Positions 106 to 24,598 of a stretch of DNA of 24,865 bases are shown in pieces. Under the pieces are notes generated by a model. It did not search any database and had not been told where the DNA came from. It was given only the letters and a program-made list of their open reading frames with translations. Source of the stretch: Octopus sinensis (Eukaryota); assembly GCF_006345805.1 (NCBI RefSeq), contig NW_021836198.1, positions 1-24,865 on the forward strand. Direction: 5' to 3'. Both the position numbers and the translations under genes were made by a program. Every line of letters begins with the position of its first letter. Position 1 is the stretch's first letter.

Positions 106-681
106 ATGGTACACGCTATCAAACGAGAAAAGACAAAAACTGAATTTGAGGTTGAAGCAATTCTTGGAGTGAGAACAAATAAAAAGAAGCAAAAAGAATA
201 TCTTATAAAATGGAAAAATTATTCAATGTTATTTAATAATTTGTTTATATAAATTTAGTGATGATAATACATGGGAACCCATAAGAAATTTGCACTGTTC
301 TGAGCTTATTGATGATTTTGAAAATAAAAATCATAATACCAAAAAACAAAATCCGAATTACCGAAATAAATTAAAATTAAATACTTATAAAATCAACAAA
401 TTGGATAACAATCATCAAAACCGTTTATCTTCTACAAGTGTAAGATTCCAATTCATTTGATATTTCAGAGTTCTGAAATCAATTTGAAACAAATTGATAA
501 GATAACAAATATTACTCGTGAAAATGATAATATATTTGTTTATGTGAAATTGTATTATCTTTATAATATAATTTTAAGACAAAACAGTCGAAAGCAACAA
601 AAGATTCCATTAGAGTCTTTACGAGACACGTGTCCAGTCATATTGATTAATTTTTTGATCAGTCGAATCAATTTTAATTAG
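106..681 (+). CDS. HP1: HP1-like heterochromatin protein (chromodomain + chromoshadow), copy 1, type A, intact; exons 106-227, 259-439, 469-551, 579-681; 162 aa
   Basis: The spliced translation is [61 protein letters not shown]...QIDKITNITRENDNIFVYVKLQNSRKQQKIPLESLRDTCPVILINFLISRINFN*. It has the chromodomain motifs EFEVE.I, YLIKWK.Y and NTWEP..NL.C..LI..F with aromatic cage F14/W36/Y39. The C-terminus aligns gap-free to the HP1 chromoshadow pattern (K..NS......P.......CP...I.F...R) once intron 3 is removed. Confidence 0.9.
228..258 (+). other. 31-nt spliceosomal intron 1 of HP1 copy 1
   Basis: GTTATT...TTTAG. Read-through hits TAA; removal gives the canonical [13 protein letters not shown] spacing. 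Confidence 0.9.
440..468 (+). other. 29-nt intron 2 of HP1 copy 1
   Basis: GTAAGA...TTTCAG, phase 0. It joins the hinge to the chromoshadow frame. Length and splice sites are kept in type B copies despite internal substitutions. Confidence 0.85.
552..578 (+). other. 27-nt intron 3 of HP1 copy 1
   Basis: GTATTA...TTAAG. It is in-frame here but contains an in-frame TAA in type B copies; removal restores the chromoshadow register. Confidence 0.85.
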
Positions 682-800
682 ATGTAATTTGAAATTTTTT
701 TGCCTAATGAATAATGTTTTCACATCTTAATAATAAAATGGTATGGTGTGTGTCTGTCTGTCTGTCTGTGTGTGCACACCAACTTCAAATTGGCAATACG

Positions 801-1692
801 ATGTCCTCGACTTACATGATGAGGTCCTTAAAACCTTCCCCCCCAAAAAAATTAAAAAAAAATTTTCTGCATTTTGGTTAAAATGAACAACTACAATGTC
901 CTCGACTTACATGATGAAGTCCTTAAAACCTTCCCCCCCAAAAAAATTAAAAAAAAATTTTCTGCATTTTGGTTAAAATGAACAACTACAATGTCCTCGA
1001 CTTACATGATGAAGTCCTTAAAACCTTCCCCCCAAAAAAATTAAAAAAAATTTTCTGCATTTTGGTTAAAATGAACAACTACAATGTCCTCGACTTACAT
1101 GATGAAGTCCTTAAAACCTTCCCCCCCCCCCAAAAAAAATTAAAAAAAATTTTCTGCATTTTGGTTAAAATGAACAACTACAATGTCCTCGACTTACATG
1201 ATGAAGTCCTTAAAACCTTCCCCCCCAAAAAATTAAAAAAAAATTTTCTGCATTTTGGTTAAAATGAACAACTACAATGTCCTCGACTTACATGATGAAG
1301 TCCTTAAAACCTTCCCCCCAAAAAAAATTAAAAAAAAATTTTCTGCATTTTGGTTAAAATGAACAACTACAATGTCCTCTTACAATGATGAAGTCCTTAA
1401 AACCTTCCCCCCCAAAAAAATTAAAAAAAAATTTTCTGCATTTTGGTTAAAATGAACAACTACAATGTCCTCGACTTACATGATGAAGTCCTTAAAACCT
1501 TCCCCCCCAAAAAAATTAAAAAAAAATTTTCTGCATTTTGGTTAAAATGAACAACTACAATGTCCTCGACTTAGATGATGAAGTCCTTAAAACCTTTCCC
1601 CCAAAAAATCAAAAATTATTTTCTGCATTTTGATTAAAATGAACAACGCGAATGTCCTCGACATTCATGATGAGGTCCATTAAAACCTTCAA
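801..1692 (+). repeat. Homogeneous minisatellite, ~93-99 bp unit, ~9.5 copies, inside the Helitron
   Basis: Repeated AAAATGAACAACTACAATGTCCTCGACTTACATGATGAAGTCCTTAAAACCTTCCCCCC-A-rich-TTTTCTGCATTTTGGTT. Units differ mainly in homopolymer length, with divergent units at the edges. Confidence 0.95.
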
Positions 1693-1900
1693 GGCAAAAA
1701 TCTCACGTATTAAGAATATCCTTGATGAAAACGACAGCGAGAATATTAACAATGATGAACTCCCAATTATTCGCGATAAAGAAATTCAATTCATCCTATG
1801 TTTTTCTCTTTAAAATTAAATGCATATATCATTATCGACCATGAATCAAAATTAAAGCTATTATCATATTGACTTTGACAGAATGTGCAATCACAGATTG

Positions 1901-2103
1901 CACGACTTTGAATAGAGTGTGCAATTAACAGATTTTGAAAAACCACTTTGATAGTTGAAACCACATTAGCACAATCATTAACACAATTTACCACCAATTG
2001 ACGCACGACCTTGAATAGAGTGTGCAATTAACAGATTTTGAAAAACACTTTGATAGTTGAAACCACATTAGCACAACCATTAACACAATTTACCACCAAT
2101 TGA
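1901..2103 (+). repeat. Two-copy ~103-bp direct tandem repeat inside the Helitron
   Basis: CACGAC(T/C)TTGAATAGAGTGTGCAATTAACAG...CACCAATTGAC at 1901 and 2004. Confidence 0.9.
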
Positions 2104-2487
2104 CAGCGCAATCAGAAGAATTTGCGTAAAAATATTAACTATTTACTTGAGTTTTTCGTAAGATAGAATTTATTTTCGGTATGCCTCTTTTCCTAAACTT
2201 TTTTATTATTCAAAAATAATTGTTTAAATAGATAACCGAAGGAGGAAAAACGAAGCTGAAGAAAAAACGGTCAGCTTAATAAGGTAATTAATTAAATCTT
2301 TTTTGTGTGTCGCTTTTTTGTGTGTCGCTTTCTTGCTTTCTGCCGCCGCATTCCGCCTGCCGCATCTCCCCCTGCCCCATTTCCGCCAGTAAAAAAAAAA
2401 AAAAAAAAGAGAAAAAAAAGGAAATTACAAAGGAAAAATGAAAAATTAAATATAAAAAAAAATAAACCACAAAAAATGAAAAAAAAG

Positions 2488-2674
2488 TTTGCAATGACAA
2501 TAAACAAGGCCCAGGGACAGTCATTAAAGGTAGTTGGGTTTTTTAGAGAGTGAGTGCTTTTCACATGGACAGCTGTATGTGGGATGCTCGAGGGTAGGCA
2601 GAAGAGAAAATTTATTCATATATGCCAAGGAAGGACGGACGACAAACATCGTTTATCAACAGGCGATAGAATAG
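2488..2674 (+). pseudogene. Helitron RepHel PIF1-like helicase C-terminal fragment (frameshifted)
   Basis: FAMTINKAQGQSLKVVG, then after a frameshift ECFSHGQLYVGCSRVGRRENLFIYAKEGRTTNIVYQQAIE*. These are the terminal helicase motifs and the typical Helitron C-terminus. Confidence 0.9.
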
Positions 2675-2915
2675 GGTTACATTAAACCAGGTAGTTTTAT
2701 ACATCTACATAAACTTATAGTTGTTTGATGAAACAGGCCCTCCGCAGGAGCTAGGTCGCGGTGAGCGAAGCGAGCTGCCGAGCTAGTTTAATCATAAAAT
2801 ATTAATCTTTCTAACGTGTACTTAATCAACTCGATGTTTACATGACCCCATTTTCGAATAGATGATTCGACATAATCTCTGAGGAATACTAAAGATTGTA
2901 AAAGTAAAGTCACCT

Positions 2916-3766
2916 GACTAACATGATAAGTTGCTTTAACCTTCTGTAAAATAAATTTAAAAATAATTTTCTGGATTTTGGTTATAATGAACAACAACAT
3001 GTCTACGACTAACATGATGCGTTTCTTTAGACCTTCCCGCCATAAAAATTGAAAAAATAATTTCTGGATTTTGGTTAAAATGAACAACAAGCCTGTCCTC
3101 GACTAACATAATGTATTTCTTTAAACCCTTCCGCCAAAAGAAATGAAAAAAATTTTCTGGATTAAGCTTAAAATGAACAACAAGCATGTCCCCGACTAAC
3201 ATGATGAGTTTGTTTAAACCTTCCCGCCAAAAAAAATGAAAAAATATTTTCTGGATTTTGGTTAAAATGAACAACAAGCATGTCCCCGACTAACATAATG
3301 TATTTCTTTAAACCCTTCCGCCCAAAAAAATGAAAAAAAATTTTCTGGATTAAGATTAAAATAAACAACAAGCATGTCCCCGACTAACATGATATATTCC
3401 CTTAAACCTCCCCGATAAAAATGAAAAAATAATTTTCTTCATTTTGTTTAAAATGGACAACAGCCATGTCCCCGACTTTCATGATGAGGTCTCTAAAACT
3501 TTCTCGCTAAAAAATTAAAAATAATTTTCTAGATTTTGGTTAAAATGAACAAGTATTTGTGCGATTAACATGATAAGTTCCTTTAAACCTTCTGCCAAAT
3601 AAATTAAAAAAATAATTTTCTGGATTTTGATTAAAATGAACAACAACATGTCCCTGACTAACATGATAAGTTCTTTTAACCTTCTGTAAAATAAATTTAA
3701 AAATAATTTTTTGAATTTTGGTTATAATGAACAACAACATGTCCACGACTAGCATGATGAGTTCCT
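2916..3766 (+). repeat. Diverged array of the same ~93-bp minisatellite family, outside the young Helitron
   Basis: Units such as TTTTCTGGATTTTGGTTAAAATGAACAACAAGCATGTCCCCGACTAACATGAT...AAACCTTCCCGCC are homologous to 801-1692 but heterogeneous. Confidence 0.9.
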
Positions 3767-3769
3767 GTC

Positions 3770-3955: not shown

Positions 3956-3974
3956 AAAAGTTCAAAAATGTGAC

Positions 3975-4490: not shown

Positions 4491-5199
4491 CTTTCTGGAC
4501 TTTAGAAGTTTAAAAAGCATCAGTCTATACAACCAGTACATCGTGCCTTATTGAGAAATTGTTATTTTAAATCGAATTATTTTTGTCTAAAAATATCCGA
4601 AAATTTTTCAAACTATTTTTAGAATAAATAAATAATTTTCATCTCACGTCAATACATTTGTAAACGCGACCTTTCAAGACGAAAAAGCTCCAATTCCAGT
4701 AACCCAAATATTGAATACAACAGATCTAATAAAAAGGAAGAAGTACAATATCTTTACTCATGATAAAAAAATACAACCAAACTCAGCGAAAATAAAGTAA
4801 TTTTGTTAAAACATGTCAGAATGGACAAAATGGTAAAAAAATTATTTTTGAAAATAGAATAATTTTTAATACTAACTTGTTCTAAATTGTTTAAAAAGTT
4901 TTAAAAAAAGAATAATTTTTTGACAGTCCCAAAGCAGAAACGACCTTGGTTACCGTCTCAATCAAAAACCTTCAACTAATTATCATTCTCAGGTTGTACC
5001 CTTAAACTGTATGTGTAATTTATTTACATTCTGGAGCCTAACTAAAAACGAACAAACAAAATATGATTTAGTAGGTCATGGAACGGCTATCTTTTTTAAT
5101 TTGACATGTTTTATAATGATGATTACTATTTTTGATAGTTTTTATAACTTTTATAATGAAATTTTGTATTCTTTTAACCTATTTTTTATTAATGATTTT

Positions 5200-5430
5200 C
5201 ATGAATTTCAACTAAATATCATTAAAACTGCACTTTAATTGAAAAATCAAAAATTTTGTGGAAAGACTCAAATTGCTGATTTTACTAAAAAGTACAGTTT
5301 GGAATATTATTATACGATGGAAACAAAACGGAACTATCATTAATCGACCAAGATTAGGTGCTCCAAAAAAATAACACGACATTCTTGCTCATTAATGAAA
5401 AAAATGGTAGTTACAAAAAAAGTATTTCCT
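5200..5430 (+). mobile_element. Degenerate Tc1-like transposase N-terminal HTH remnant (part of the amplified HP1 cassette)
   Basis: With frameshifts it reads GKTQIADF..STVWNIIIRWKQNGTIINRPRLGAPKKIT, which fits the Tc1 pattern TV..I..RW...G....RPR.GRP.K.T. Confidence 0.7.
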
Positions 5431-5726
5431 GAAAAGAAATTTATATTCAAGATTGGCTGAGGATGGTAGTTTTTATTCTTGTCACCAATTTTTCCATTTT
5501 TCCTTTTTCTCACAGAATAAACGGCATTACTCTTTGGGAACACTTTACCTATTCTATATGTTCTGTACATGAAGCATGATATACAAAAAATACCGTTAAA
5601 ATTTAGCATTTTAATAATTTTTCTTCTGTTAAAAATGAGTTCTGATTAAATATATTTTAAATTTAATTTGTTTCTTTTAATAATTAACAATTAATTAAAA
5701 TTTATTTAATTGTTATATACTTTCTG

Positions 5727-6302
5727 ATGGTACACGCTATCAAACGAGAAAAGACAAAAACTGAATTTGAGGTTGAAGCAATTCTTGGAGTGAGAACAAA
5801 TAAAAAGAAGCAAAAAGAATATCTTATAAAATGGAAAAATTATTCAATGTTATTTAATAATTTGTTTATATAAATTTAGTGATGATAATACATGGGAACC
5901 CATAAAAAATTTGCACTGTTCTGAGCTTATTGATGATTTTGAAAATAAAATCATAATACCAAAAAACAAAATCCGAATTACCACCGAAATAAATTAAAAT
6001 TAATACTTATAAAATCAACAAATTGGATAACATCATCAAAACCGTTTATCTTCTACAAGTGTAAGATTCCAATTCATTTGATATTTCAGAGTTCTGAAAT
6101 CAATTTGAAACAAATTGATAAGATAACAAATATTACTCGTGAAAATGATAATATATTTGTTAATGTGAAATTGTATTATCTTTATAATATAATTTTAAGA
6201 CAAAACAGTCGAAAGCAACAAAAGATTCCATTAGAGTCTTTACGAGACACGTGTCCAGTCATATTGATTAATTTTTTGATCAGTCGAATCAATTTTAATT
6301 AG
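5727..6302 (+). pseudogene. HP1: HP1-like copy 2 (type A); exon 2 has three 1-bp deletions and a 3-bp insertion
   Basis: Near-identical to copy 1. The indels are mostly single A losses and give an internal stop as written; they could be sequencing error. Confidence 0.75.
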
Positions 6303-6687: not shown

Positions 6688-6747
6688 TTATTTTTTTAAT
6701 AAGATATTTTCATTGAATAAAGTGGTTTTTTTGATGCTGTTAATCAC

Positions 6748-8289: not shown

Positions 8290-9480
8290 TCTACATTTGG
8301 CATCTTCAAGGGCAAGGCCCGTCAGGTTCCAGAATTGAAGGGATACCAGCTCTTTTCAGAGCTTTGTGAATTAGATTGTTAATTTCAGTGTTCCGAGGAA
8401 ATCTAACGGCACTCATTCGACAAGACTGAGGATGTAGCCCAAAGACGTCAACTTTATCCCCACAACGACAGTGGTGGGGTCTGCAGACAGGGCGGAGAAG
8501 GGAATAAATTCAGCCCAAAGCCTGAGTATGGCTGACAGGCGGAACGGAAACAAGCCAGTCTGTGTTGGTCGAGGAGTGGTTCTAGGTCAGTTGAAGATCG
8601 ACGGAAAAAAATTTTGTCCCTGTCTCGCTGAGAAAAGACATCGGAAGGGACTTCAGAAAAATGCGTCTCCAAAGAGCGAGAGCCGAATCAATATCAGAGT
8701 CCAACGATGATTAAGTAGTTTTTTCCAGAATTTTTTGGACAAGAAGATATGATCCAGATGTCGAAGAAAGAAAGGCAAGAAGGGCCAAATCAATACTTGA
8801 ACGGAAGCCCAGACCCCCGTGACTCACAGGAAGTTTAGCCTGACACCAGGTAATATCGTCGAAATACACATTGAGAATTTTCTTTCCATACCTCCGAACC
8901 AAAGAATCATAAGATTCCTGCTTTTGCGTGGCATAAAAACAAGGTGAGGTCCTCAGGATATTAACGATTTTTGGGATCAAAAGATAGTTCTTGAGGATTT
9001 AGTATGAAGGATGAGAATCAATGGCAGAAGGTTTTTCAGATTCTATAAATTTTTTTTGGCAGGGAGAATTCGTGAAGCTGAGTCGGCGAGAATTGGTGAC
9101 CCCAGAATTTTCAAATCATACAGGGGTGTCTCTTTCAACTCAGAAGGAATCCGCAAAAAAAGAGAAGGAGTTCTTAAACAAGGATGGCTCAACAGAGAGA
9201 TTGACAATATCGGTTTTGCTGGAATTAATAACCAGACCAATGTCGGATAAAGCCGGAATTAGACTGGCTAAGTCCTTTAGCAAAACATCAGGCCGACCGC
9301 CCAGGGTACAATCGTCGAGATACCAAAGATTAAGGGGTGATTTATTAACCCGGGCAATGGCATCCACGGCAAGAGCGAACGATAATGGTCCTAAAGGATC
9401 ACCCTGTTGGACGCCACAGGACGAAGAAATGAAAGAACCACCAGCGATTAAAAGTGATGGAAGCCAGTACAAATCAATTT
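8290..9480 (-). mobile_element. Second, diverged CRE-like retrotransposon (RT core to zinc knuckle, degenerate)
   Basis: GVQQGDPLGPLSF, NLWYLDD, KILGSPI, AKLPVSHGGLGFR, CGDKVDVFGLHPQSC..RFPRNTEINNLIHKALKRAGIPSILEP; several frameshifts and internal deletions. Confidence 0.88.
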
Positions 9481-9481
9481 G

Positions 9482-9645
9482 ATGGTACGTGAAATCAAAC
9501 AAAAAAATACAAAAACTGAATTTAAGGTTGAAGCGATTCATGGAGTGAGGATAAATAGAAAGAAAAAAAAAGAATATCTTATAAAATGAAAGAATTATTC
9601 ACTGTTATTTGATAATTTGTTTATATAAATTTAGTGATGATAATA
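9482..9645 (+). pseudogene. HP1: HP1-like copy 3 (B-related): exon 1, intron 1 and 11 nt of exon 2 only; Trp36 changed to TGA
   Basis: MVREIKQKNTKTEFKVEAIHGVRINRKKKKEYLIK*; homology ends at GATGATAATA|TGTCGC. Confidence 0.85.
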
Positions 9646-10100
9646 TGTCGCGAGCGCTGCGAGCGATCGAGCGCTGAGAGCGACTTTGACGCCTAACAAG
9701 CCTGTCATCAACAAATATATTTATTAAATTATTTAAAATTTTAACATGATTTAAAATTAAAATTGAAATAACTTAAGTTTTCCATTGAATCCCATAAAAT
9801 AATTTATAAGTAGACCTTAATATAAAAAGTAAAATCAATGAATACTGAACGCTAATTTGGTTTAGGTTGTGAGGGGGTAATAATTTGACAGATCTCATTG
9901 CTATTTCTCGTTTCAATCTCTAAAATTAGGTCTTCTAATCACAAATGAACTGTGCAGACAGGCTTGCTCCTTCAGAAGATTCTTGTTTTGACATTTTAAT
10001 AAATTATGAAGCATTTAGATTTTTTCTCATTATTCTAAAATATCAATTATAAATTTTAAAATTTTATTTTTATTTATGAAATCGGTTTTAAAGCACATTC
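9646..10100. mobile_element. Putative element beginning TGTCGC with a GC-rich foldback terminus; right boundary unknown
   Basis: Abrupt switch to TGTCGCGAGCGC...GAGCGAC (GTCGC/GCGAC inverted) followed by AT-rich DNA. No matching second terminus was found, so the end coordinate is approximate. Confidence 0.4.
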
Positions 10101-10399
10101 TGCTTTGGCATCGATTTTAATTTTTGTAATCGAATATATTTAAACCCAAATACCAGCCCGGGTATTTGACTTACCTGGAATTTAGAGAGTATATTAACGT
10201 GCTTATTGTTGTTGTGGTGAACATACATGTCAAAAACTCGATTTTTCATTTTACTCTGCCAAATTCCCTTCTCAGATCCTGCAGCTAATCGAAAAAAGAA
10301 ATTCGTTTAAAGGTCGAAAGCATTTCACAATAGACAACGGGATCGAATAAGAGAACTAAATAAAGTCATTTCCAACAAATTAATAAAATTTTATGCCGG

Positions 10400-11580
10400 G
10401 ATCAGCCATATTCCTCACAGGAAATACGATGGACCATGTCTGAAGTCCCTTCTACCTCGGAGAACCCGTGATATAATAATTTTTACTCACGAAGAAGTGT
10501 CCCAGACTATCAAAAATCTAAGAAGGACGGGCTCTTGTGGATCTGATGGAATTTCAACAATTCTGTTGAAGAACCTTGAGAAAGTAGAAATAACAGCCCT
10601 GGTTTAAATCTATAACTTCTCAATAAACAACAATGCAATACCTACCATTTTTCAAGTTTGTCCTTTCCTAAAACCGGGAAAGCCTAAATACGACTTAGCG
10701 TCATATAGACCAATCTCCTTTCCCTGTGTGTTATCTAAAGCTCTGGAAAAGCTGGTACTCGATCAAGTCAAACTTTACCTTCCTGAAATGAATTTCCAAC
10801 ATGGATTCAAAAGTAGGAAATCAACGGACTCAGATCTTACCACGCTGACTACTTTTATCTCGAAAAGACTAACGCTCAAACTCTGCAGCGAAAAGACCGT
10901 CATGTGTTCGGTGGACATTCACAAGGATTTCGACTCCGTGTCTACAAAAATACTGACTAGGACAATATTTCTCAGGAGTATTCCCTCCATCTAAAAAAAG
11001 TGGATAACTAATTTTCTCACTGGGTGAAATTGAAGAATCTATACGAAAAGTACAAATCAAGCTCGAAGTATTTTCCAAATGAAGTACCTCAAGGCTTGCC
11101 TTTATCACCAGCTCTTTTCATATTATACTTATAGATCACACCATTCCAAAAGCTGAATATTTAATTGTTTTACATATACGAATGATATTGTATTTACGAA
11201 TGATAGATAACTTATTTCATGGCTTTACCGAGTACGCCATTTCATTGCTAAACTACTACGTTGGCCTGATCAAATTCGAGACGAGTTAGTACGATGAAAT
11301 GGATCTTATTGTCCAAAGAGTACTTGGAGAAAATCCGTCCACGTGTTGGGAAGCAATAAGGAGAGATTTTACTTGATTCGCGGGCAGCTAGGACGTGGAC
11401 TGAGTAATATCGTACACTTAAGTGAGCGAATTCTTACTAAGATGCACGACACCTTGTGGAGTGGGTCGAGTGTATCCCAAAGGAAGGCTGCCATTCTTGC
11501 TCCTGAAAAAGCGCGTGGTACACACCTAGGGACCATAAAAGACTATGTCTCGGCTAAATATTGTCTAGGTGCTATCTAAG
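10400..11580 (+). mobile_element. Degenerate I/jockey-like LINE reverse transcriptase region
   Basis: FTHEEV..TIKNL...SCGSDGI, LKPGKP...SYRPIS...LSKALEKLV, QHGFKSRKST, VDIHKDFDSV, a frameshifted VPQGLPLSP motif, and WEANKE..LIR.QL. Confidence 0.8.
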
Positions 11581-11819
11581 TTAATGTAAAAAGTTGATCA
11601 AACTTCAGGGGGAATCCCTAATTAAAAAGATCAACTTAAAAGTACTTCAGGCGACTCTCTTAGCAGCCTGGACAACCCGGACATTGACGTATCGTCGTCA
11701 TCAACGGTGCTGAATTATAGCAATAACTCTCCTCAATCAGAATGCTTGCTCTCATATTTCAGGACAGAAACTTTTTTAATGGTCAACGGAAACAGTGAAA
11801 CCACTGTAAAAGTAAGGCG

Positions 11820-11990
11820 GCGAACGTTGACAATTTAGCCACTTAATGCTGGAGTACATGATTACACATGGAGGCATAACGAGGTGGTGAGATCCCTCCA
11901 TCTTCTGCTCTGCAATAAGTATGGCTTGAGGCGGTCCAGAAAGATGCGAAGATGCGAATTCATAGAGTTCTGTCGGTGTCTGAGAATTTT
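11820..11990 (+). mobile_element. R4/NeSL-like (RLE-type) non-LTR retrotransposon fragment
   Basis: VDNLAT.C...DYTWRHNEVVRSLHLLLCNKYGLRRSRKMR, the CCHC end plus RHN motif that precedes the RLE nuclease. Confidence 0.65.
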
Positions 11991-12118
11991 AATAATAGCA
12001 TTTTAATAATATACGTTCTATTAAAAATGTGTTTTGTTTTAATATATTTTAGATTTAATTGTTTTTCTTTTTATAAATAACAATCAATAAAAAATATCTA
12101 ATTGTTATATACTCTCTG

Positions 12119-12687: not shown

Positions 12688-12773
12688 ATGTAATTTGAAA
12701 TCATTTTGCCTAATGAATAATTTTTTCTTTCTAACGTGTACTTGATCAAGTAGATGTTTACATGACCTCATTT

Positions 12774-13564
12774 CGAATCAATATCAGAGTCCAACGATGA
12801 TTAAGTAGTTTTTTCCAGAATTTTTTGGACAAGAAGATATGATCCAGATGTCGAAGAAAGAAAGGCAAGAAGGGCCAAATCAATACTTGAACGGAAGCCC
12901 AGACCCCCGTGACTCACAGGAAGTTTAGCCTGACACCAGGTAATATCGTCGAAATACACATTGAGAATTTTCTTTCCATACCTCCGAACCAAAGAATCAT
13001 AAGATTCCTGCTTTTGCGTGGCATAAAAACAAGGTGAGGTCCTCAGGATATTAACGATTTTTGGGATCAAAAGATAGTTCTTGAGGATTTAATATGAAGG
13101 ATGAGAATCAATGGCAGAAGGTTTTTCAGATTCTATAAATTTTTTTTGGCAGGGAGAATTCGTGAAGCTGAGTCGGCGAGAATTGGTGACCCCAGAATTT
13201 TCAAATCATACAGGGGTGTCTCTTTCAACTCAGAAGGAATCCGCAAAAAAAGAGAAGGAGTTCTTAAACAAGGATGGCTCAACAGAGAGATTGACAATAT
13301 CGGTTTTGCTGGAATTAATAACGAGACCAATGTCGGATAAAGCCGGAATTAGACTGGCTAAGTCCTTTAGCAAAACATCAGGCCGACCGCCCAGGGTACA
13401 ATCGTCGAGATACCAAAGATAAGGGGTGATTTATAACCCGGCAATGGCATCCAGCAAGAGCGAACGATAATGGTCCTAAAGGATCACCTGTTGGACGCCA
13501 CAGGACGAAGAAATGAAAGAACCACCAGCGATTAAAAGTGATGGAAGCCAGTACAAATCAATTT
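12774..13564 (-). mobile_element. Duplicate of the second CRE-like fragment
   Basis: Same ORFs as 8711-9480 (e.g. 12801-13070 is identical in the ORF track). Confidence 0.85.
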
Positions 13565-13565
13565 G

Positions 13566-13728
13566 ATGGTACGTGAAATCAAACAAAAAATACAAAAACT
13601 GAATTTAAGGTTGAGCGATTCATGGAGTGAGGATAAATAGAAAGAAAAAAAGAATATCTTATAAAATGAAAGAAAGAATTATCACTGTTATTTGATAATT
13701 TGTTTATATAAATTTAGTGATGATAATA
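13566..13728 (+). pseudogene. HP1: HP1-like copy 5, duplicate of truncated copy 3
   Basis: Same TGA and same GATAATA|TGTCGC breakpoint. Confidence 0.85.
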
Positions 13729-14479
13729 TGTCGCGAGCGCTCGAGCGATCGCGCGCTCGAGAGAGCTGAGAGCGACTTTGACGCCTAACAAGCCTGTCAT
13801 CAACAAATATATTTATAAATTATTTAAAATTTAACATGATTTAAAATTAAAATTGAAATAACTTAAGTTTCCATTGAATCCCATAAAATTTATAAGTAGA
13901 CCTTAATATAAAAAGTAAAATCAATGAATACTGAACGCTAATTTGGTTTAGGTTGTGAGAGGGGGTAATAATTTGACAGATCTCATTGCTATTTCTCGTT
14001 TCAATCTCTAAAATTAGGTCTTCTAATCACAAATGAACTGTGCAGACAGGCTTGCTCCTTCAGAAGATTCTTGTTTTGACATTTTAATAAATTATGAAGC
14101 ATTTAGATTTTTTCTCATTATTCTAAAATATCAATTATAAATTTAAAATTTTATTTTATTTATGAAATCGGTTTTAAAGCACATTCTGCTTTGCATCGAT
14201 TTTAATTTTTGTAATCGAATATATTTAAACCCAAATACCAGCCCGGGTATTTGACTTACCTGGAATTTAGAGAGTATATTAACGTGCTTATTGTTGTTGT
14301 GGGAACATACATGTCAAAAACTCGATTTTCATTTTACTCTGCCAAATTCCTTCTCAGATCCTGCAGCTAATCGAAAAAAGAAATTCGTTTAAAGGTCGAA
14401 AGCATTTCACAATAGACAACGGGATCGAATAAGAGAACTAAATAAAGTCATTTCCAACAAATTAATAAAATTTTATGCC

Positions 14480-15650
14480 GGGATCAGCCATATTCCTCAC
14501 AGGAAATACGATGACATGTCTGAAGTCCCTTCTACCTCGGAGAACCGTGATATAATAATTTTTACTCACGAAGAAGTGTCCCGACTATCAAAATCTAAGA
14601 AGGACGGGCTCTTGTGGATCTGATGGAATTTCAACAATTCTGTTGAAGAACCTTGAGAAGTAGAAATACAGAAATAACAGCCCTGGTTTAAATCTATAAC
14701 TTCTCAATAAACAACAATGCATACCTACCATTTTTCAAGTTTGTCCTTTCCTAAAACCGGGAAAGCCTAAATACGACTTAGCGTCATATAGACCAATCTC
14801 CTTTCCCTGTGTGTTATCTAAAGCTCTGGAAAAGCTGGTACTCGATCAAGTCAAACTTTACCTTCCTGAAATGAATTTCCAACATGGATTCAAAAGTAGG
14901 AAATCAACGGACTCAGATCTTACCACGCTGACTACTTTTATCTCGAAAAGACTAACGCTCAAACTCTGCAGCGAAAAGACCGTCATGTGTTCGGTGGACA
15001 TTCACAAGGATTTCGATCCGTGTCTACAAAAATACTGACTAGGACAATATTTCTCAGGAGTATTCCCTCCATCTAAAAAAAGTGGATAACTAATTTTCTC
15101 ACTGGGTGAAATTGAAGAATCTATACGAAAAGTACAAATCAAGCTCGAAGTATTTCCAATGTGAAGTACCTCAAGGCTTGCCTTTATCACCAGCTCTTTT
15201 CATATTATACTTATTAGATCACACATTCCAAAGCTGAATATTTAATTGTTTTACATATACGAATGATTGTATTTACGAATGATAGATAACTTATTTCATG
15301 GCTTTACCGAGTACGCCATTTCATGCTAAACTACTACGTTGGCCTGATCAAATCGAGACGAGTTAGTACGATGAAATGGATCTTATTGTCCAAAGAGTAC
15401 TTGGAGAAAATCCGTCCACGTGTTGGGAAGCAAATAAGGAGAGATACTTGATTCGCGGGCAGCTAGGACGTGGACTGAGTAATATCGTACACTTAAGTGA
15501 GCGAATTCTTACTAATGCACGACACCTTGTGGAGTGGGTCGAGTGTATCCCAAAGGAAGGCTGCCATTCTTGCTCCTGAAAAAGCGCGTGGTACACACCT
15601 AGGGACCATAAAAGACTATGTCTCGGCTAAATATTGTCTGGTGCTATCTA
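14480..15650 (+). mobile_element. Duplicate of the I/jockey-like RT fragment
   Basis: Matches 10400-11580. Confidence 0.8.
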
Positions 15651-15889
15651 AGTTAATAAAAAAGTGATCAAACTTCAGGGGGAATCCCTAATTAAAAAGA
15701 TCAACTTAAAAGTACTTCAGGCGACTCTCTTAGCAGCCTGGACAACCCGGACATTGACGTATCGTCGTCATCAACGGTGCTGAATTATAGCAATAACTCT
15801 CCTCAATCAGAATGCTTGCTCTCATATTCAGGACAGAAACTTTTTTAATGGTCAACGGAAACAGTGAAACCAACGTGTAAAGTAAGGCG

Positions 15890-16055
15890 GGCGAACGTTG
15901 ACATTTAGCCACTTAATGCTGGGAGTACACCATGATTACACATGGAGGCAACGAGGTGGTGAGATCCCTCCATCTTCTGCTCTGCAATAAGTATGGCTTG
16001 AGGCGGTCCAGAAAGATGCGAAGATGCGAATTCATAGAGTTCTGTCGGTGTCTGA
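15890..16055 (+). mobile_element. Duplicate of the R4/NeSL-like fragment
   Basis: Matches 11820-11990. Confidence 0.62.
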
Positions 16056-16188
16056 GAATTTAATAATAGCATTTTAATAATATACGTTCTATTAAAAATG
16101 TGTTTTGTTTTAATATATTTTAGATTTAATTGTTTTTCTTTTTATAAAAACAATCAATAAAAAATATCTAATTGTTATATACTCTCTG

Positions 16189-16760
16189 ATGGTACACGCT
16201 ATCATACGAGAAAAATACAAAAACTGAATTTGAGGTTGAAGCGATTCATGGAGTGAGAATAAATAGGAAGAAGGAAAAAGAATATCTTATAAAATGGAAG
16301 AATTATTCACTGTTATTTGATAATTTTTTTATATAAATTTAGTGATGATAATACATGGGAACCCGTAAGAAATTTAAATTGTTCCAAGCTTATTGATGAT
16401 TTTTAAAATAAAAATCATAATAAAAAAAAATCTTAATTCCCAAAATAAATTGAATTTAAATACTTCTAAAATCAACAAATTAGATAGCAATCATCAAAAC
16501 CGTCTATCTTCTACAAATGTAAAATTTCATTTAATGTTATATTTCAGTGTTCGGAAATCAATTTGACACAAATTGACAAGATAACAAATATTACTCGTGA
16601 AAATGATAATATATTAGTTTATGTGAAATTGTATTAACTTTATAAAATAATTTTAAGACAAAACAGTCGAAAGCAACGAAAGATTCCATTGGAGTCTTTA
16701 CGAGACACGTGTCCAGTCCTTTTAATTAATTTTTTGATCAGTCGAATCAATTTTAATTAG
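16189..16760 (+). pseudogene. HP1: HP1-like copy 6 (type B), full length, TAA/frameshift in the A-rich hinge
   Basis: Duplicate of copy 4. The lesions lie in homopolymer runs and differ from those of copy 4. Confidence 0.75.
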
Positions 16761-16924
16761 ATGTAATTTGAAATCATTTTGCCTAATGAATAATTTTTTC
16801 TTTCTAACGTGTACTTGATCAAGTAGATGTTTACATGACCTCATTTCGAATAAACGATTGACATAATCTTTGACGAATGTTAAAGATTGTAGAACTAAAA
16901 TCACTGTTTTTCAAAATATTTATT

Positions 16925-19269: not shown

Positions 19270-19520
19270 AACCTAAATTCAGAAAATATTTTTTCATTTC
19301 TTTTGGCGGAAGGGTTAAAGAAACACATCATTTTAGTCGGGGACATGCTTACTGTTCATTTTAACCAAAATCCAGAAAATATTTTTCACTTTTTTTGGCC
19401 AGAAGGTTTAAACGAACTCATCATGTTAGTCGTAGACATGTTGTTGTTCATTATAACCAAAATGCAGAAAATTATTTTAAATTATTTTACAGAAGGTTAA
19501 AGCAACTTATCATGTTAGTC
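19270..19520 (-). repeat. Inverted short array of the ~93-bp minisatellite
   Basis: Reverse complement of 2916-3300-type units, with the same HP1 3' flank junction. Confidence 0.9.
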
Positions 19521-20108
19521 AGGTGAATTTGCTTTTAAAATCTTTAGTATTCCTCAGAGATTATGTCGAATCGTCTATTCGAAAAAGGAGTCATGTAAAC
19601 ATCTAGTTGATTAAGTACACGTTAGAAAGATTAATATTTTATGATTAAATGTGAAAACATTATTCATTAGGCAAAAAAATTTCAAATTACATCTAATTAA
19701 AATTGATTCGACTGATCAAAAAATTAATCAATATGACTGGACACGTGTCTCGTAAAGACTCTAATGGAATCTTTTGTTGCTTTCGACTGTTTTGTCTTAA
19801 AATTATATTATAAAGATAATACAATTTCACATTAACAAATATATTATCATTTTCACGAGTAATATTTGTTATCTTATCAATTTGTTTCAAATTGATTTCA
19901 GAACTCTGAAATATCAAATGAATTGGAATCTTACACTTGTAGAAGATAAACGGTTTTGATGATTGTTATCCAATTTGTTGATTTTATAAGTATTTAATTT
20001 TAATTTATTTCGGTAATTCGGATTTTGTTTTTTGGTATTATGATTTTTATTTTCAAAATCATCAATAAGCTCAGAACAGTGCAAATTTTTTATGGGTTCC
20101 ATGTATTA

Positions 20109-20902
20109 TGTCACATGCCCTGTTCGTTACCATGCCCCGCTCGTTACCATTGCTCTAAATTTTTAAAATTTCAATTTAAAATATTTAAATGATTGAAATA
20201 TATTTACTTATAATTTAAAAATAATAATATTATGGATTTTTATTTTTTCAATGCTTAAACCATTATCATTAAAAAACAATAAATTAAGCATGCTGTTTTA
20301 TCTCATGTTCATGGTTATAGGGTATAGGTTAGGGTTAGGGTATAGGTTAGGGTTAGGGTTAGGGTTTGAAAAATTTAAAGTAGAATTTTCGAATGGAGAT
20401 ACAAAGATTGTTCACATGAAAAGAATCAAAAAAGGACAAATTTAATTTTCGTTTTAAACTTCAGATCTATATATGATTTTAAACTAAAAAATGGATAAAG
20501 TTGAGTTTTTTATAAGAGATCTACAGATGATTTTAAACCTTTATCTTTTACATTTCAAAAAATGTTTTAAATAAAACTAAAAACTGGTTAGAGTTAATTA
20601 TAAAACTATCAAATTATGTGCCTTTAAAGCGTTTCACAACATTCAATTTAAAATATGTTTTAATGTGCTTATCAGTCAAAATGGTTTGTTGTATAAAATA
20701 TTATTTTAATTTATTTGTTTTAAAGCATCTTTTAGTATAATCATTAAATTGTACTCTAATTAACCTAATATATAGGTTGAATTTTATGTCGTTGTGATTG
20801 ATTATTAATTTTTCTAAAAATTGAAAAATCATTAATCAATTATTTCTCAGAAATAATTCGGAGGTAACGAGTGGGGCATAGTAATCCCTGAGGCATGTGA
20901 CA
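20109..20902. mobile_element. Non-autonomous Ginger-like (TGT...ACA) TIR element with 5-bp TSD
   Basis: Ends are TGTCACATGCC...GGCATGTGACA with ~40-bp imperfect TIRs. TATTA is duplicated at 20104-20108 and 20903-20907, and the other HP1 copies show the empty site. Confidence 0.8.
20314..20367 (+). repeat. Telomere-like (TTAGGG)n block inside the TIR element
   Basis: GTTATAGGGTATAGGTTAGGGTTAGGGTATAGGTTAGGGTTAGGGTTAGGGTTT. Confidence 0.85.
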
Positions 20903-21361
20903 TATTATCATCACTAAATTTATATAAACAAATTATTAAATAACATTGAATAATTTTTCCATTTTATAAGATATTCTTTTGCTTCTTTTATTTGTTCTCA
21001 CTCCAAGAATTGCTTCAACCTCAAATTCAGTTTTTGTCTTTTCTCGTTTGTTTGATAGCGTGTACCATCAGAAATTATATAACAATTAAATAAATATAAT
21101 TAATTGTTAATTATTAAAAGAAACAAATTAAATTTAAAATATATTTAATCAGAACTCATTTTTAACAGAAGAAAAATTATTAAAATGCTAAATTTTAACG
21201 GTATTTTTTTGTATATTATGTTTCATGTACAGAACATATAGAATAGGTAAAGTGTTCCCAAAGAGTAATGCCGTTTATTCTGTGAGAAAAAGGAAAAATG
21301 GAAAAATTGGTGACAAGAATAAAAACTACCATCCTCAGCCAATCTTGAATATAAATTTCTT

Positions 21362-21600: not shown

Positions 21601-21884
21601 TAATAAAAAATAGGTTAAAAGAATACAAAATTTCATTATAAAAGTTATAAAAACTATCAAAAATAGTAATCATCATTATATAACATGTCAAATTAAAAAA
21701 AGATAGCTGTTCCATGACCTACTAAATCATATTTTGTTTGTTCGTTTTTAGTTAGGAACCAAAATGTATATAAATTACACATCCAGTTTAAGATTGAGGC
21801 AAGCTTGAAAAGAGCTCGAGCATTCATGAAGCGGTTTAATTTTTTCAATGTATCTTTCAGAACAAACACCATACGAAATAACTT

Positions 21885-22810
21885 CTAAAAGACGTTATCA
21901 TTAAGGGAGACATGAATGTTAAACACCCACTTCGGTTTGCTAGACAAACGTCAGACTCAAGAGGGAAGAAACAACTATATCATCTCGGTTTCCTAACGGT
22001 CCTGAATTACCGTACAAAAATTCGAGAACCCCATACAGGCAACTGATAAGATGACATCGTTGCACATCTCTCTCTGCTGTCCCGCCCAGTCTACAATAAC
22101 ATCCTTTATCCTATAATTTCAGAAGTGTGCACAATCCAATTATTTTGAGAATTAAGAAGAACTTTTCACCGAAAGAATGCTTAATCAACTACAAACACAC
22201 GGACTGGATTCTTTACCAAAAGTTTACAGATAAATACTTGCAGAATTTTTTTCTAGGCAATTAAATTCCTCTGGAGAAAATAATTGCCTACGTCAATAGT
22301 TCTATTTTGGTAACTCATTTTAGACTCGGAAAGAAGTCAGTAGTTCTTAACTTCAACAAAAACGAAATATCATTTTGCCCGATTCAGAAAATCTTAGGAG
22401 TTACGTTCGATGCGCACATGTGCTTCTCTCCACACGTAGTCAACGTCTTAACGAAAAGTGAAAAGAAGACCAACATATTGAACTGTCTTTCGGGACGTTA
22501 GAAGTTTAAAAAGCATCAGTCTATACAACCAGTACATCGTGCCTTGTTTCTTGTATATATGCACGGTATGAAGCAACTTCATTTCCTGGTCCAAATAAAG
22601 GAAGATTGAGGCAAGCTTGAAAAGAGCTCGAGCATTCATGAAGCGTAAAAAAAAGCTTTCGACTCTTACAAGCATGGAAGACCTATTGATGTTATATGGA
22701 CGAACAGATGAAGAAATGAAGACAAGGCTCACACGACTACTACGCGTTTGCGGGGGTACTTGTGAGGAGTCTCTGGATCACGAAATGTTATTTGTCCTGT
22801 CTTTTGCATT
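21885..22810 (+). mobile_element. Heavily deleted I/jockey-like LINE (APE, RT end and zinc-knuckle scraps)
   Basis: IIKGDMNVKHP...DSRG..VLN (APE), KILGVTFDAHMCFSPHV...NILNCLSG (RT end), and CGG.CEESLDH (knuckle-like). Confidence 0.7.
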
Positions 22811-23454
22811 CTTAATGAGAAATTGTTATTTTAAATCGAATTTATTTTGTCTAAAAATATCCGAAAAATTTTATCAAACTATTTTTAGAATAAATAAATA
22901 ATTTTCATCTCACGTCAATACATTTGTAAACGCGACCTTTCAAGACGAAAAAGCTCCAATTCCAGTAACCCAAATACTGAATACAACAGATCTAATAAAA
23001 AGGAATAAGTACTCATGATAAAAAAATACAACCAAACTCAGCGAAAATAAAGTAATTTTGTTAAAACATGTCGGAATCGACAAAATGGTCAAAAAATTCT
23101 TTTTGAAAATAAAATAATTTTTAATACTAATTTGTTCTAAATTGTTTAAAAAGTTTTTAAAAAAAGAATAATTTTTTGATAGTCCCAAAGCAGAAACGAC
23201 CTTGGTTACCGGCTCAATCAAAAACCTTCAACTAATTATCATTCTCAGGTTGTACCCTTAAACTGTATGTGTAATTTATTTACATTCTGGAGCCTAACTA
23301 AAAACGAACAAACAAAATATGATTTAGTAAGTCATGGAACGGCTATCTTTTTTTAATTTGACATGTTTTATAATGATAATTATTATTTTTGATAGCTTTT
23401 ATAACTTTTATAATGAAATTTTGTATTCTTTTAACCTATTTTTATTAATGATTT

Positions 23455-23690
23455 TCATGATTTCAACTAAATATCATTAAAACTGCAATTTAATTGAAAA
23501 ATCAAAAATTTTGTGGAAAGACTCAAATTGCTGATATTACTGAAAAGTACAGTTTGGAATATTATTATCCGATGGATACAAGACGGAACTATCATTAATC
23601 GACCAAGATTAGGTGCTCCAAAAAAATAACACGACATTCTTGCTCATTAATGAAAAGATTGGTCGATACAAAAAAAGTATTACTTGAAAA
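23455..23690 (+). mobile_element. Third copy of the Tc1 N-terminal remnant
   Basis: STVWNIIIRWIQDGTIINRPRLGAPKK. Confidence 0.65.
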
Positions 23691-23982
23691 GAAATTTATA
23701 TTCAAGATTGCCTGAGGATGGTAGTTTTTATTTTTGTCATTAATTTTTCCATTTTTCCTTTTTCTCAGAAAATAAACGGCATTACTCTTTGGGAACACTT
23801 TACCTTTTCTATATGTTCTGTACATGAAGCATGATATACATAAAAACACCGTTAAAATTTAGCATTTTAATAATTTTTCTTCTGTTAAAAATGAGTTCTG
23901 ATTAAATATATTTTAAATTTAATTTGTTTCTTTTAATAATTAACAATTAATTAAAATTTATTTAATTGTTATATACTTTCTG

Positions 23983-24555
23983 ATGGTACACGCTATCAAA
24001 CGAGAAAAGACAAAAACTGAATTTGAGGTTGAAGCAATTCTTGGAGTGAGAACAAATAAAAAGAAGCAAAAAGAATATTATAAATAAAATGGAAAAAATT
24101 ATTCAATGTTATTTAATAATTTGTTTATATAAATTAGTGATGATAATACATGGGAACCATAAGAAATTTGCACTGTTCTGAGCTTATTGATGATTTTGAA
24201 AATAAAAATCATAATACCAAAAAAAACAAATCCGAATTACCGAAATAAATTAAAATTAAATACTTATAAAATCAACAAATTGGATAACAATCATCAAAAC
24301 CGTTTATCTTCTACAAGTGTAAGATTCCAATTCATTTGATATTTCAGAGTTCTGAAATCAATTTGAAACAAATTGATAAGATAACAATATTACTCGTGAA
24401 AATGATAATATATTTGTTTATGTGAATTGTATATCTTTATAATATAATTTAAGACAAAACAGTCGAAAGCAACAAAAGATTCCATTAGAGTCTTTACGAG
24501 ACACGTGTCCAGTCATATTGATTAATTTTTTGATCAGTCGAATCAATTTAATTAG
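23983..24555 (+). pseudogene. HP1: HP1-like copy 8 (type A, same subtype as copy 1), many small indels
   Basis: Shares copy 1's diagnostic bases (ATAAGA, GTTTATGTG) and its downstream Helitron insertion; the indel pattern resembles read error. Confidence 0.75.
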
Positions 24556-24598
24556 ATGTAATTTGAAATTTTTTTGCCTAATGAATAATGTTTTCACA

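What the first reader, a model, noticed from the sequence alone, without database searches (positions are those of the whole stretch)
106..24555. Eight copies of a cryptic HP1 (chromo + chromoshadow) gene amplified inside a transposon cluster
Seen: a 4-exon gene invisible to the ORF track recurs at 106, 5727, 9482, 12119, 13566, 16189, 21068(-) and 23983, always next to TE remnants, in two sequence types. Established: HP1 reads H3K9me through an aromatic cage (F14/W36/Y39 are kept here) and dimerises through the chromoshadow domain to silence transposons. Inference: the silencing reader itself has become mobile cargo. It could act as a TE-borne decoy or anti-silencer, as a host dosage expansion, or as a neutral passenger of repeat amplification.
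Basis: partly seen in the sequence, partly recalled or inferred. Interest (0 to 1): 0.88.

Follow-up and report, generated by a model that had tools for sequence, protein, structure and literature searches.

The report
Decaying HP1 gene copies among repeats
A small heterochromatin-protein (HP1) gene really is repeated eight times in this transposon- and satellite-rich stretch, but only one copy is intact as assembled, and the copies look like passengers of local DNA duplication rather than cargo of a transposon.

Summary
A 4-exon gene with 31/29/27-nt GT..AG introns starts at all eight stated coordinates. The spliced 162-aa product of copy 1 passes Pfam thresholds for Chromo (1.3e-18) and Chromo_shadow (1.4e-9) and aligns end to end with human HP1-alpha, with F14/W36/Y39 at the cage positions.

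Of the eight copies, five are full length, one is split by a 794-bp TIR element, and two are 166-bp stubs with W36 changed to a stop. As assembled, only copy 1 (106-681) has an open frame.

There are two types, A and B, about 10% apart. Exons diverge half as much as non-exons, and dN/dS is about 0.33, so the ancestor was a working gene.

The gene lies outside the one definable neighbouring transposon, a canonical Helitron at 725-2786. The copies share different lengths of flank, and they nest by shared insertions and substitutions. That pattern indicates stepwise segmental duplication, including a 4.09-kb tandem repeat, and gives no evidence of transposition.

Caveat: indels equal or outnumber substitutions between near-identical duplicates, so some 1-nt frameshifts may be assembly errors.

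Verdict: a lineage-specific HP1 paralogue cluster, mostly pseudogenes. The "mobile cargo/decoy" reading is not supported. The host was not identified.

The parts
106..681 (+). HP1 copy c1 (type A). Exons 106-227, 259-439, 469-551 and 579-681. It is the only copy with an intact 162-aa ORF as assembled.
   Evidence: Splice model and translation. Pfam Chromo 1.3e-18 and Chromo_shadow 1.4e-9. Full-length alignment to CBX5.
5727..6302 (+). HP1 copy c2 (type A). It has three 1-nt deletions in the hinge (near 5946, 6001, 6031) and a 3-nt insertion (5980-5982). The frame is lost between the first and third deletion and stops appear there.
   Evidence: All three deletions lie in A-runs, so they could be assembly errors.
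9482..9645 (+). Stub f1: exon 1, intron 1 and 10 nt of exon 2. W36 is changed to TGA at 9587-9589. It abuts a LINE RT fragment on the left and unrelated GC-rich sequence on the right.
12119..12687 (+). HP1 copy c3 (type B). It has a 1-nt and a 5-nt deletion in the hinge, together -6 and so in frame, and a 1-nt deletion near 12441 at the end of exon 2 that shifts the frame.
13566..13728 (+). Stub f2, the tandem-duplicate of f1, with further small indels.
16189..16760 (+). HP1 copy c4 (type B). It has a 1-nt insertion at 16211, a TAA stop at 16404-16406 caused by a substitution, and the shared 5-nt hinge deletion.
19693..21068 (-). HP1 copy c6 (type A). It is split in exon 2 by the insertion at 20109-20902. 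It also has a 4-nt insertion and a 2-nt deletion in exon 1, and a 1-nt deletion next to the insertion site.
23983..24554 (+). HP1 copy c5 (type A). It has six indels, including a rearranged W36 region that creates a TAA stop.
725..2786 (+). Non-autonomous Helitron inserted 44 nt after the c1 stop codon. It has 5'-TC and 3'-CTAG ends, an A|T target and no TSD. It carries a 95-bp satellite (797-1690), a 102-bp x2 repeat (1900-2104) and a PIF1-like helicase C-terminal remnant (about 2485-2680).
   Evidence: The empty site TTTTCACA|TTTAATCAT is kept in c2 and c6. Sequence, satellite, helicase remnant below threshold.
24599..24865 (+). 5' part of the same Helitron after c5. It runs off the end of the window.
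2787..3766 (+). Leader L (2787-2916) plus a 92-95-bp satellite array. The same leader follows c2, c3, c4 and c6.
19270..19649 (-). Leader L plus satellite following c6.
20109..20902 (.). 794-bp TIR element inside c6. Its TIR is TGTCACATGCC and it has a 5-bp TSD (TATTA at 20104-20108 and 20903-20907). It contains TTAGGG-like repeats at 20318-20363.
8684..16854 (+). 4.09-kb tandem duplication (two units, 97.6% identical). It produced the pairs f1/f2 and c3/c4.
4547..5621 (+). Upstream block shared by type A copies. c2 and c5 (22811-23877) share 1075 bp. c6 (21173-21792, minus strand) shares only the proximal 620 bp.

Best explanation
The window holds a local cluster of paralogues of one small HP1-family gene. 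The protein is 162 aa and consists of a chromodomain, a Lys/Asn-rich hinge and a chromoshadow domain. The gene has four exons and 27-31-nt introns. It sits in a heterochromatin-like nest of a Helitron, satellite arrays, LINE fragments and a TIR element.

Shown:
- The ancestral locus already had the gene immediately upstream of a leader-plus-satellite block.
- That locus was copied at the DNA level, with introns kept, in steps: direct duplications, an inverted duplication and a 4.09-kb tandem duplication.
- Transposons then landed beside and inside the copies.
- The gene is not between the ends of any definable transposon.

Shown as assembled: only copy 1 (106-681) keeps an open frame. The others have frameshifts, stop codons or a TE insertion, or are 166-bp stubs.

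Inferred:
- The copies are passengers of segmental duplication, and most are decaying pseudogenes.
- The family descends from a working HP1 paralogue and, through copy 1 or an intact relative elsewhere, may still include one. Such a protein would read H3K9me2/3 with the F14/W36/Y39 cage and dimerise through its chromoshadow domain.
For: Identity:
- Pfam Chromo at residues 14-64, 67.1 bits against a cutoff of 25.1. Chromo_shadow at residues 111-161, 38.3 bits against a cutoff of 22.4.
- phmmer against PDB aligns residues 10-159 with CBX5 residues 20-176. F14, W36 and Y39 fall on the cage positions.

Copies and lesions.

Past constraint between types A and B:
- Exon divergence is 8.1% against 15.6% in introns and flanks (Fisher p=0.003).
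- dN/dS is 0.33-0.35 overall and 0.18 in the chromoshadow domain. Synonymous changes are in excess (binomial p=0.004).
- GT..AG and intron lengths are kept in both types.

Not cargo:
- The Helitron at 725-2786 begins with TC right after ...TTTTCACA and ends CTAG|TTTAATCAT. c2 and c6 show the uninterrupted TTTTCACA|TTTAATCAT. The gene is therefore outside that element.
- No inverted terminal repeats bracket the gene.
- The upstream homology differs in length between copies: about 125 bp between A and B, 620 bp for c2/c5/c6 and 1075 bp for c2/c5.

Stepwise history:
- c1 and c5 share the Helitron insertion.
- c2 and c6 share two substitutions.
- c3/c4 and f1/f2 are pairs from one 4.09-kb tandem duplication.
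Against: - Indel events equal or outnumber substitutions between near-identical duplicates: 48 against 32 in the 4-kb tandem repeat, 5 against 3 for c1/c2 and 4 against 1 for c3/c4. Most are 1-nt changes in homopolymers. That is unusual for real divergence and typical of long-read consensus error. c2 and c3 might therefore be intact, which would favour a maintained multi-copy family.
- All full copies keep the same leader-plus-satellite block on their 3' side. A Helitron-type element could in principle have moved them together.
- Only 25 kb is visible. There are no reads, no RNA data and no genome to count or place other copies.
- The host organism was not identified.
Confidence: 0.6

Rival explanations
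1. Maintained multi-copy (ampliconic) host HP1 family. Several copies would be functional and kept for dosage or for an arms race with heterochromatic selfish DNA, like the young HP1 paralogues of flies. On this reading, many of the frameshifts seen here are assembly errors.
For: - dN/dS of about 0.33 and lower exon divergence between types A and B show selection acted after the two types split.
- Splice sites and intron lengths are kept in both types.
- The indel excess, mostly in homopolymers, suggests consensus errors. If 1-nt indels are discounted, c2 and c3 read through.
- Recurrent lineage-restricted HP1 amplification is documented in Diptera (PMC6188558, PMC3380853).
Against: Several lesions are not homopolymer slips:
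- the TAA substitution in c4 (16404-16406);
- the 5-nt hinge deletion shared by c3 and c4;
- the rearranged W36 region with a stop in c5;
- the 4-nt insertion and the 794-bp TE insertion in c6;
- two truncated stubs that share a W36 stop.

At most about three of the eight copies could be intact.
Confidence: 0.2
2. Transposon cargo. The HP1 gene would travel with a Helitron-type, satellite-bearing element, for example by use of an upstream alternative 5' end. It could serve the element as a decoy, an anti-silencer or a heterochromatin-targeting factor.
For: - Every full copy is followed at the same nucleotide by the leader of a satellite-bearing block (L). In c1 and c5 a canonical Helitron sits at that same A|T site.
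- Introns are retained, so copying was at the DNA level, as with Helitron capture.
- TEs that capture host silencing-pathway gene pieces are known, for example TART-A and nxf2 (bioRxiv 10.1101/2020.02.20.957324, listed).
Against: - The gene lies 5' of the Helitron's TC end, not inside it.
- No TC...CTRR or TIR pair brackets the gene.
- The Helitron 3' end (about 2300-2786) occurs only once in the window.
- The copies have unequal shared flanks.
- Seven of the eight copies are defective as assembled.
- No literature precedent for TE-borne chromo-plus-chromoshadow genes was found.
Confidence: 0.08
3. Assembly artefact. The array, or part of it, would come from mis-assembly of a repeat-rich region or from two haplotypes placed side by side, so the true copy number is lower.
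For: - The indel-rich differences between near-identical copies suggest a noisy consensus.
- The 4.09-kb tandem pair differs by only 0.8% in substitutions.
Against: - The copies differ by large structural characters: the Helitron is present in c1/c5 and absent in c2/c6, and c6 alone has the 794-bp TIR insertion.
- Orientations, upstream flanks and the 10% A/B divergence also differ.
- At least five distinct loci must therefore be real.
Confidence: 0.07

Closest known systems
HP1 / CBX1-3-5 family (Su(var)205, Swi6)
   Same: It has an N-terminal chromodomain, a hinge and a C-terminal chromoshadow domain. The aromatic cage positions are kept (F14/W36/Y39), as are V16 and N51. The Ile at the dimer-interface position is kept.
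   Different: It is very small (162 aa), with almost no N-terminal tail and no C-terminal extension. The Trp that contacts PxVxL ligands is Phe here, and the Trp inside the chromoshadow KWK motif is Leu; both are read by eye from the alignment. The closest database proteins are only about 38% identical over 40% of the query.
Lineage-restricted amplification of HP1 paralogues in Diptera (Levine et al. 2012, PMC3380853; Helleu and Levine 2018, PMC6188558), including Rhino, Oxpecker and HP1D2
   Same: Several young paralogues with chromodomain and chromoshadow domain, birth and death of copies including pseudogenes, and a proposed link to heterochromatic selfish DNA.
   Different: Here the copies lie inside the repeat nest itself and most are broken. 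The host is not a fly, since its introns are 27-31 nt. No expression data are available.
Host-gene capture by transposons (Helitron gene capture, Pack-MULEs; TART-A carrying a piece of nxf2 as counter-defence)
   Same: A host silencing-pathway gene is found physically tied to transposons and is copied at the DNA level.
   Different: In this window the gene is not between the ends of any element, and its copies do not share fixed boundaries.
Transposon-borne chromodomains (chromoviruses; the copia-like element found in loci L002/L003)
   Same: The chromodomain sequence is similar: 67% identity over 38 residues to the polyprotein of L003.
   Different: Those are single chromodomains inside a polyprotein with no chromoshadow domain. 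This window has a free-standing gene with its own introns and a chromoshadow domain.
Helitrons that carry internal tandem-repeat (satellite) arrays (from my own knowledge of DINE-1-like and bivalve Helitron-type elements; not checked here)
   Same: The element at 725-2786 has TC...CTAG ends, an A|T target, no TSD, an internal 95-bp array and a helicase remnant.
   Different: It is a neighbour of the HP1 gene, not its carrier.

Membership tests
HP1 family | N-terminal chromodomain | tested here: met
   PF00385 at residues 14-64, E=1.3e-18, 67.1 bits against a cutoff of 25.1. There are many PDB chromodomain hits.
HP1 family | C-terminal chromoshadow domain | tested here: met
   PF01393 at residues 111-161, E=1.4e-9, 38.3 bits against a cutoff of 22.4. 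The alignment with CBX5 runs through the chromoshadow domain.
HP1 family | Aromatic cage for methyl-lysine | tested here: met
   In the alignments F14, W36 and Y39 align with the Y/W/F cage positions of CBX5 and CDYL. They are kept in types A and B. W36 is a stop in f1/f2 and is disrupted in c5.
HP1 family | Chromoshadow dimer interface and PxVxL-binding residues | tested here: inconclusive
   Read by eye from the alignment, the interface Ile is kept, the C-terminal Trp is Phe, and the protein ends one residue later.
HP1 family | Binding of H3K9me2/3 and dimerisation | not testable with these tools
   Needs peptide-binding and sizing experiments.
HP1 family | Open reading frame in each copy | tested here: not met
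   Only c1 is open as assembled. Seven of the eight copies carry frameshifts, stops or an insertion, or are truncated. Some 1-nt indels may be assembly errors.
Transposon cargo (captured host gene) | The gene lies between the two termini of a definable element | tested here: not met
   The Helitron's 5'-TC starts at 725, 44 nt after the stop codon, and the empty site is preserved in c2/c6. No inverted termini lie around the gene.
Transposon cargo (captured host gene) | All copies share the same outer boundaries | tested here: not met
   Shared upstream flank is about 125 bp (A against B), 620 bp (c2/c5/c6) and 1075 bp (c2/c5). The 3' flanks also differ.
Transposon cargo (captured host gene) | Discrete insertions at unrelated loci with target-site signatures | not testable with these tools
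   Only a 25-kb window is available. The source genome is not in the collections: the exact-sequence look-up failed for the spliced HP1 protein and three window ORFs.
Young HP1 paralogue amplification (Diptera type) | Several paralogues with chromodomain and chromoshadow domain, with signs of constraint | tested here: met
   Two types about 10% apart with dN/dS 0.33-0.35 and exons less diverged than non-exons.
Young HP1 paralogue amplification (Diptera type) | Expression, typically germline-biased | not testable with these tools
   No transcript data.
Helitron (element 725-2786) | 5'-TC and 3'-CTRR ends, insertion between A and T, no TSD | tested here: met
   The left junction is CACA|TC..., the right junction is ...CTAG|TTTAATCAT, and the empty site is CACA|TTTAATCAT.
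Helitron (element 725-2786) | Subterminal 3' hairpin | tested here: inconclusive
   The fold of 2727-2790 gives -9.8 kcal/mol with z=-0.28 against shuffles.
Helitron (element 725-2786) | Rep/helicase coding remnant | tested here: inconclusive
   Herpes_Helicase E=8.4e-5 (21.2 bits, cutoff 27) and UvrD_C_2 E=0.004. Both are below the cutoff.

The most novel reading that the evidence does not exclude
The HP1 paralogue is physically coupled to a Helitron/satellite module and spreads with it, for example by 5' transduction. Repeats would then carry their own H3K9me reader, acting as a decoy or anti-silencer, or as a factor that seeds heterochromatin on the element's satellite arrays. A milder version is an ampliconic HP1 family inside heterochromatin that takes part in an intragenomic conflict.
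Probability: 0.08. Interest if true: 0.8.

Novelty: new member of a known kind. Interest (0 to 1): 0.33.

Why it matters
If copy 1 (or an intact relative elsewhere) is expressed, the host has a very small, lineage-specific HP1 paralogue whose gene sits in the type of repeat-rich DNA that HP1 proteins are known to bind. That would extend the 'recurrent HP1 birth and death' pattern known from flies to a very different eukaryote with 27-31-nt introns. Such hosts may include myxozoans, which are reported to lack the cytosine-methylation pathway (PMC13644364), but the host is unverified.

As it stands, the cluster is mainly a worked example of how segmental duplication and transposon insertion multiply and then erode a gene. 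It also shows that ORF-based tracks miss genes with ultra-short introns.

Tried and rejected
1. The word-indexed protein search with the spliced HP1 gave one weak hit (38% identity). The exact-sequence look-up found neither the HP1 nor three window ORFs in the collection. The source genome is therefore not available.

I did not try to get round this.

3. LINE ORFs used as taxonomic probes gave only unnamed ENA proteins at 40-58% identity. One encoding contig (L001) was uninformative.

4. The metagenome scan with the HP1 protein returned three loci. L002 and L003 match 67% over 38 residues; L003, the one I read, is a GC-rich copia-like retrotransposon whose polyprotein holds that chromodomain. 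L004 (43% over residues 14-64) was not examined. None was pursued as a relative of this gene.

5. Rfam and tRNA scans found nothing.

Selected stop-free fragments were scanned instead.

7. From memory I read the block upstream of c2/c5/c6 (about 5250-5440) as the N-terminus of a Tc1/mariner transposase. Neither Pfam nor PDB supports this, so it remains an unverified lead.

8. A search for inverted termini around the gene found only AT-rich chance matches.

9. I searched for a second end of the sequence that truncates f1/f2. There is none in the window.

10. Literature searches for HP1 captured by transposons found no case.

Full report
WHAT IS THERE

The window is AT-rich eukaryotic DNA with no tRNA or Rfam hits. 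It is made almost entirely of repeats. A blastn of the first 760 bases against the window finds:
- five full-length copies (1-760, 5622-6359, 12016-12727, 16087-16800, 23878-24636);
- one copy on the minus strand split in two (21172-20903 and 20109-19636);
- two 166-bp pieces (9480-9645 and 13564-13728).

THE GENE

In copy 1 the exons are 106-227, 259-439, 469-551 and 579-681. They are joined by GT..AG introns of 31, 29 and 27 nt and give a 162-aa protein.
- Pfam finds Chromo at residues 14-64 (E=1.3e-18) and Chromo_shadow at residues 111-161 (E=1.4e-9). Both are above their gathering scores.
- Against PDB sequences the protein aligns over residues 10-159 with human CBX5/HP1-alpha. F14, W36 and Y39 fall on the methyl-lysine cage positions.
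- By eye from that alignment, the Ile of the chromoshadow dimer interface is kept and the PxVxL-contacting Trp is Phe.

STATE OF THE COPIES

Only c1 is open as assembled.
- c2 has three 1-nt deletions in the hinge and a 3-nt insertion. Stops appear in the shifted stretch.
- c3 has -1 and -5 deletions in the hinge, which together keep the frame, and a further -1 at the end of exon 2.
- c4 has a +1 in exon 1, a TAA made by a substitution (16404-16406) and the same -5 deletion.
- c5 has six indels, including a rearranged W36 region with a stop.
- c6 has a 4-nt insertion, a 2-nt deletion and a 794-bp TIR element in exon 2. The element spans 20109-20902, with a 5-bp TSD and the TIR TGTCACATGCC.
- f1 and f2 are stubs ending 10 nt into exon 2, with W36 changed to TGA.

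A CAVEAT ON THE FRAMESHIFTS

Between near-identical duplicates, indel events equal or outnumber substitutions:
- 48 against 32 in the 4-kb tandem repeat;
- 5 against 3 for c1/c2;
- 4 against 1 for c3/c4.

Most are 1-nt changes in homopolymers. That is not what real divergence usually looks like, and it is what long-read consensus error looks like. c2 and c3 might therefore be intact in the organism. The lesions in c4, c5, c6, f1 and f2 are not of that kind.

WAS IT EVER A WORKING GENE?

Types A (c1, c2, c5, c6) and B (c3, c4) differ by 8.1% in exons and 15.6% in introns and flanks (Fisher p=0.003). dN/dS is 0.33-0.35 overall and 0.18 in the chromoshadow domain, with a significant excess of synonymous changes (p=0.004). 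Splice sites and intron lengths are kept in both types. The two types therefore diverged, at least for part of the time, as functional genes.

IS THE GENE TRANSPOSON CARGO?

The evidence says no.

1. After the stop codon, c2 and c6 read ...TTTTCACA|TTTAATCATAAAAT.... In c1 and c5 the same CACA is followed by TC.... At 2786/2787 an element ends ...GAGCTAG|TTTAATCATAAAAT. This is a canonical Helitron insertion: 5'-TC, 3'-CTAG, between A and T, no TSD, and the empty site preserved in paralogues. The element spans 725-2786. It carries a 95-bp satellite and, just before its 3' end, a helicase C-terminal remnant (Herpes_Helicase E=8.4e-5, below threshold). The HP1 gene lies outside this element.

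2. No inverted termini bracket the gene.

3. The copies share unequal flanks. A and B share only about 125 bp before the ATG. c2, c5 and c6 share 620 bp. c2 and c5 share 1075 bp.

4. The copies nest by derived characters:
   - c1 and c5 share the Helitron;
   - c2 and c6 share two substitutions;
   - c3/c4 and f1/f2 are pairs from a single 4.09-kb tandem duplication, 8684-12773 and 12774-16854;
   - c5 and c6 lie head to head.

This is the pattern of stepwise segmental duplication in a repeat-rich region, with transposons landing afterwards. Introns are retained, so retroposition of a spliced mRNA is excluded.

One feature keeps the cargo idea alive at low probability. All full copies are followed at the same nucleotide by the leader of a satellite-bearing block (L; also present alone at 2787-2916), which may itself be an old Helitron-type element.

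SURROUNDINGS
- Reverse-transcriptase fragments lie at 9143-9598(-), 10608-10991(+) and 17704-18188(+).
- The C-terminal part of a GC-rich LINE lies at 6871-8080(-). Its nearest relatives are only about 40-44% identical.
- Satellite arrays lie at 797-1690, 2916-3766 and 19270-19520, and further monomers run from about 24674 to the window end.

HOST

The host was not identified. The source genome is not in the searchable collections. Introns of 27-31 nt are very unusual. A 2026 paper reports introns under 30 bp in animals only in myxobolid myxozoans and in Dicyema. It gives Henneguya salminicola a median intron length of 27 bp and a GC content of 29.1%, from a long-read assembly polished with Racon. 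Outside animals it lists ciliates and microsporidia (PMC13644364). The AT-rich background and the TTAGGG-like repeats at 20318-20363 are compatible with such a host. This is a lead, not a result.

COMPARISON WITH WHAT IS KNOWN

Recurrent, lineage-restricted birth and death of HP1 paralogues, including pseudogenes, is documented across Diptera and linked there to heterochromatic selfish DNA (PMC3380853, PMC6188558). I found no report of a chromo-plus-chromoshadow gene carried by a transposon. Transposon-borne chromodomains exist but are single domains within polyproteins. An example turned up in the metagenome scan (L003).

VERDICT

The best reading is a lineage-specific HP1 paralogue cluster amplified passively by segmental duplication inside a heterochromatin-like repeat nest and now mostly decaying (confidence 0.6). 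The rivals are:
- a maintained multi-copy family masked by assembly errors (0.2);
- true Helitron-linked cargo (0.08);
- an assembly artefact (0.07).

This is a new member of a known kind and of moderate to low interest, unless reads, transcripts or a genome-wide survey revive the cargo or ampliconic reading.

Noticed in passing
window 725-2786 (and 24599 to the window end): A canonical non-autonomous Helitron (TC...CTAG, A|T target, no TSD, empty site preserved in paralogues). It carries an internal 95-bp satellite array of 9.4 units that is 79% similar to the free-standing arrays next to it. The satellite may therefore spread with Helitron-type elements.
   Followed up: partly
window 20109-20902; also 9645/9646 and 13728/13729: A 794-bp TIR element (TGTCACATGCC..., 5-bp TSD) sits in exon 2 of c6. 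The stubs f1 and f2 are truncated at exactly the same nucleotide (GATGATAATA|TGTC...) by a different GC-rich sequence that also begins TGTC. This could be a shared insertion hotspot or a related element family. The element also holds TTAGGG-like repeats at 20318-20363.
   Followed up: partly
window, all near-identical duplicate pairs (for example 8684-12773 against 12774-16846): Indel events equal or outnumber substitutions, mostly 1-nt changes in homopolymers. This suggests residual long-read consensus errors in the assembly, so frameshift-based pseudogene calls anywhere in this assembly need read-level checking.
   Followed up: partly
window 228-258, 440-468, 552-578 and the same introns in the other copies: The spliceosomal introns are only 31, 29 and 27 nt. 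This restricts the likely host to a few groups: myxobolid myxozoans, dicyemids, ciliates and microsporidia (PMC13644364). The host was not identified.
   Followed up: partly
window 6871-8080 (-) and 8309-9470 (-): Two fragments of one LINE superfamily have a C-terminal region that I read from memory as a restriction-like endonuclease. The first is 55% GC in a genome background of about 27% GC and still has long open frames, which suggests a recent arrival. The best database relatives are only 40-44% identical.
   Followed up: partly
window 17718-17941 and 18866-19089: An inverted pair of LINE reverse-transcriptase fragments, 91% complementary and 924 nt apart.
   Followed up: no
window about 5250-5440 (also upstream of c5 and c6): A short ORF (VWNIIIRWKQNGTIINRPRLGAPKKITRH...) recalls the N-terminal helix-turn-helix of Tc1/mariner transposases. 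Neither Pfam nor PDB confirms this.
   Followed up: yes
L003 40-4632 (marine metagenome contig Ga0115001_10014518; L002 is similar): A GC-rich copia-like retrotransposon polyprotein with a chromodomain placed between the integrase and reverse-transcriptase regions. It is 67% identical over 38 residues to this window's chromodomain.
   Followed up: no
window 1900-2104: A 102-bp unit repeated twice (97% identical) inside the Helitron. Its origin is unknown.
   Followed up: no
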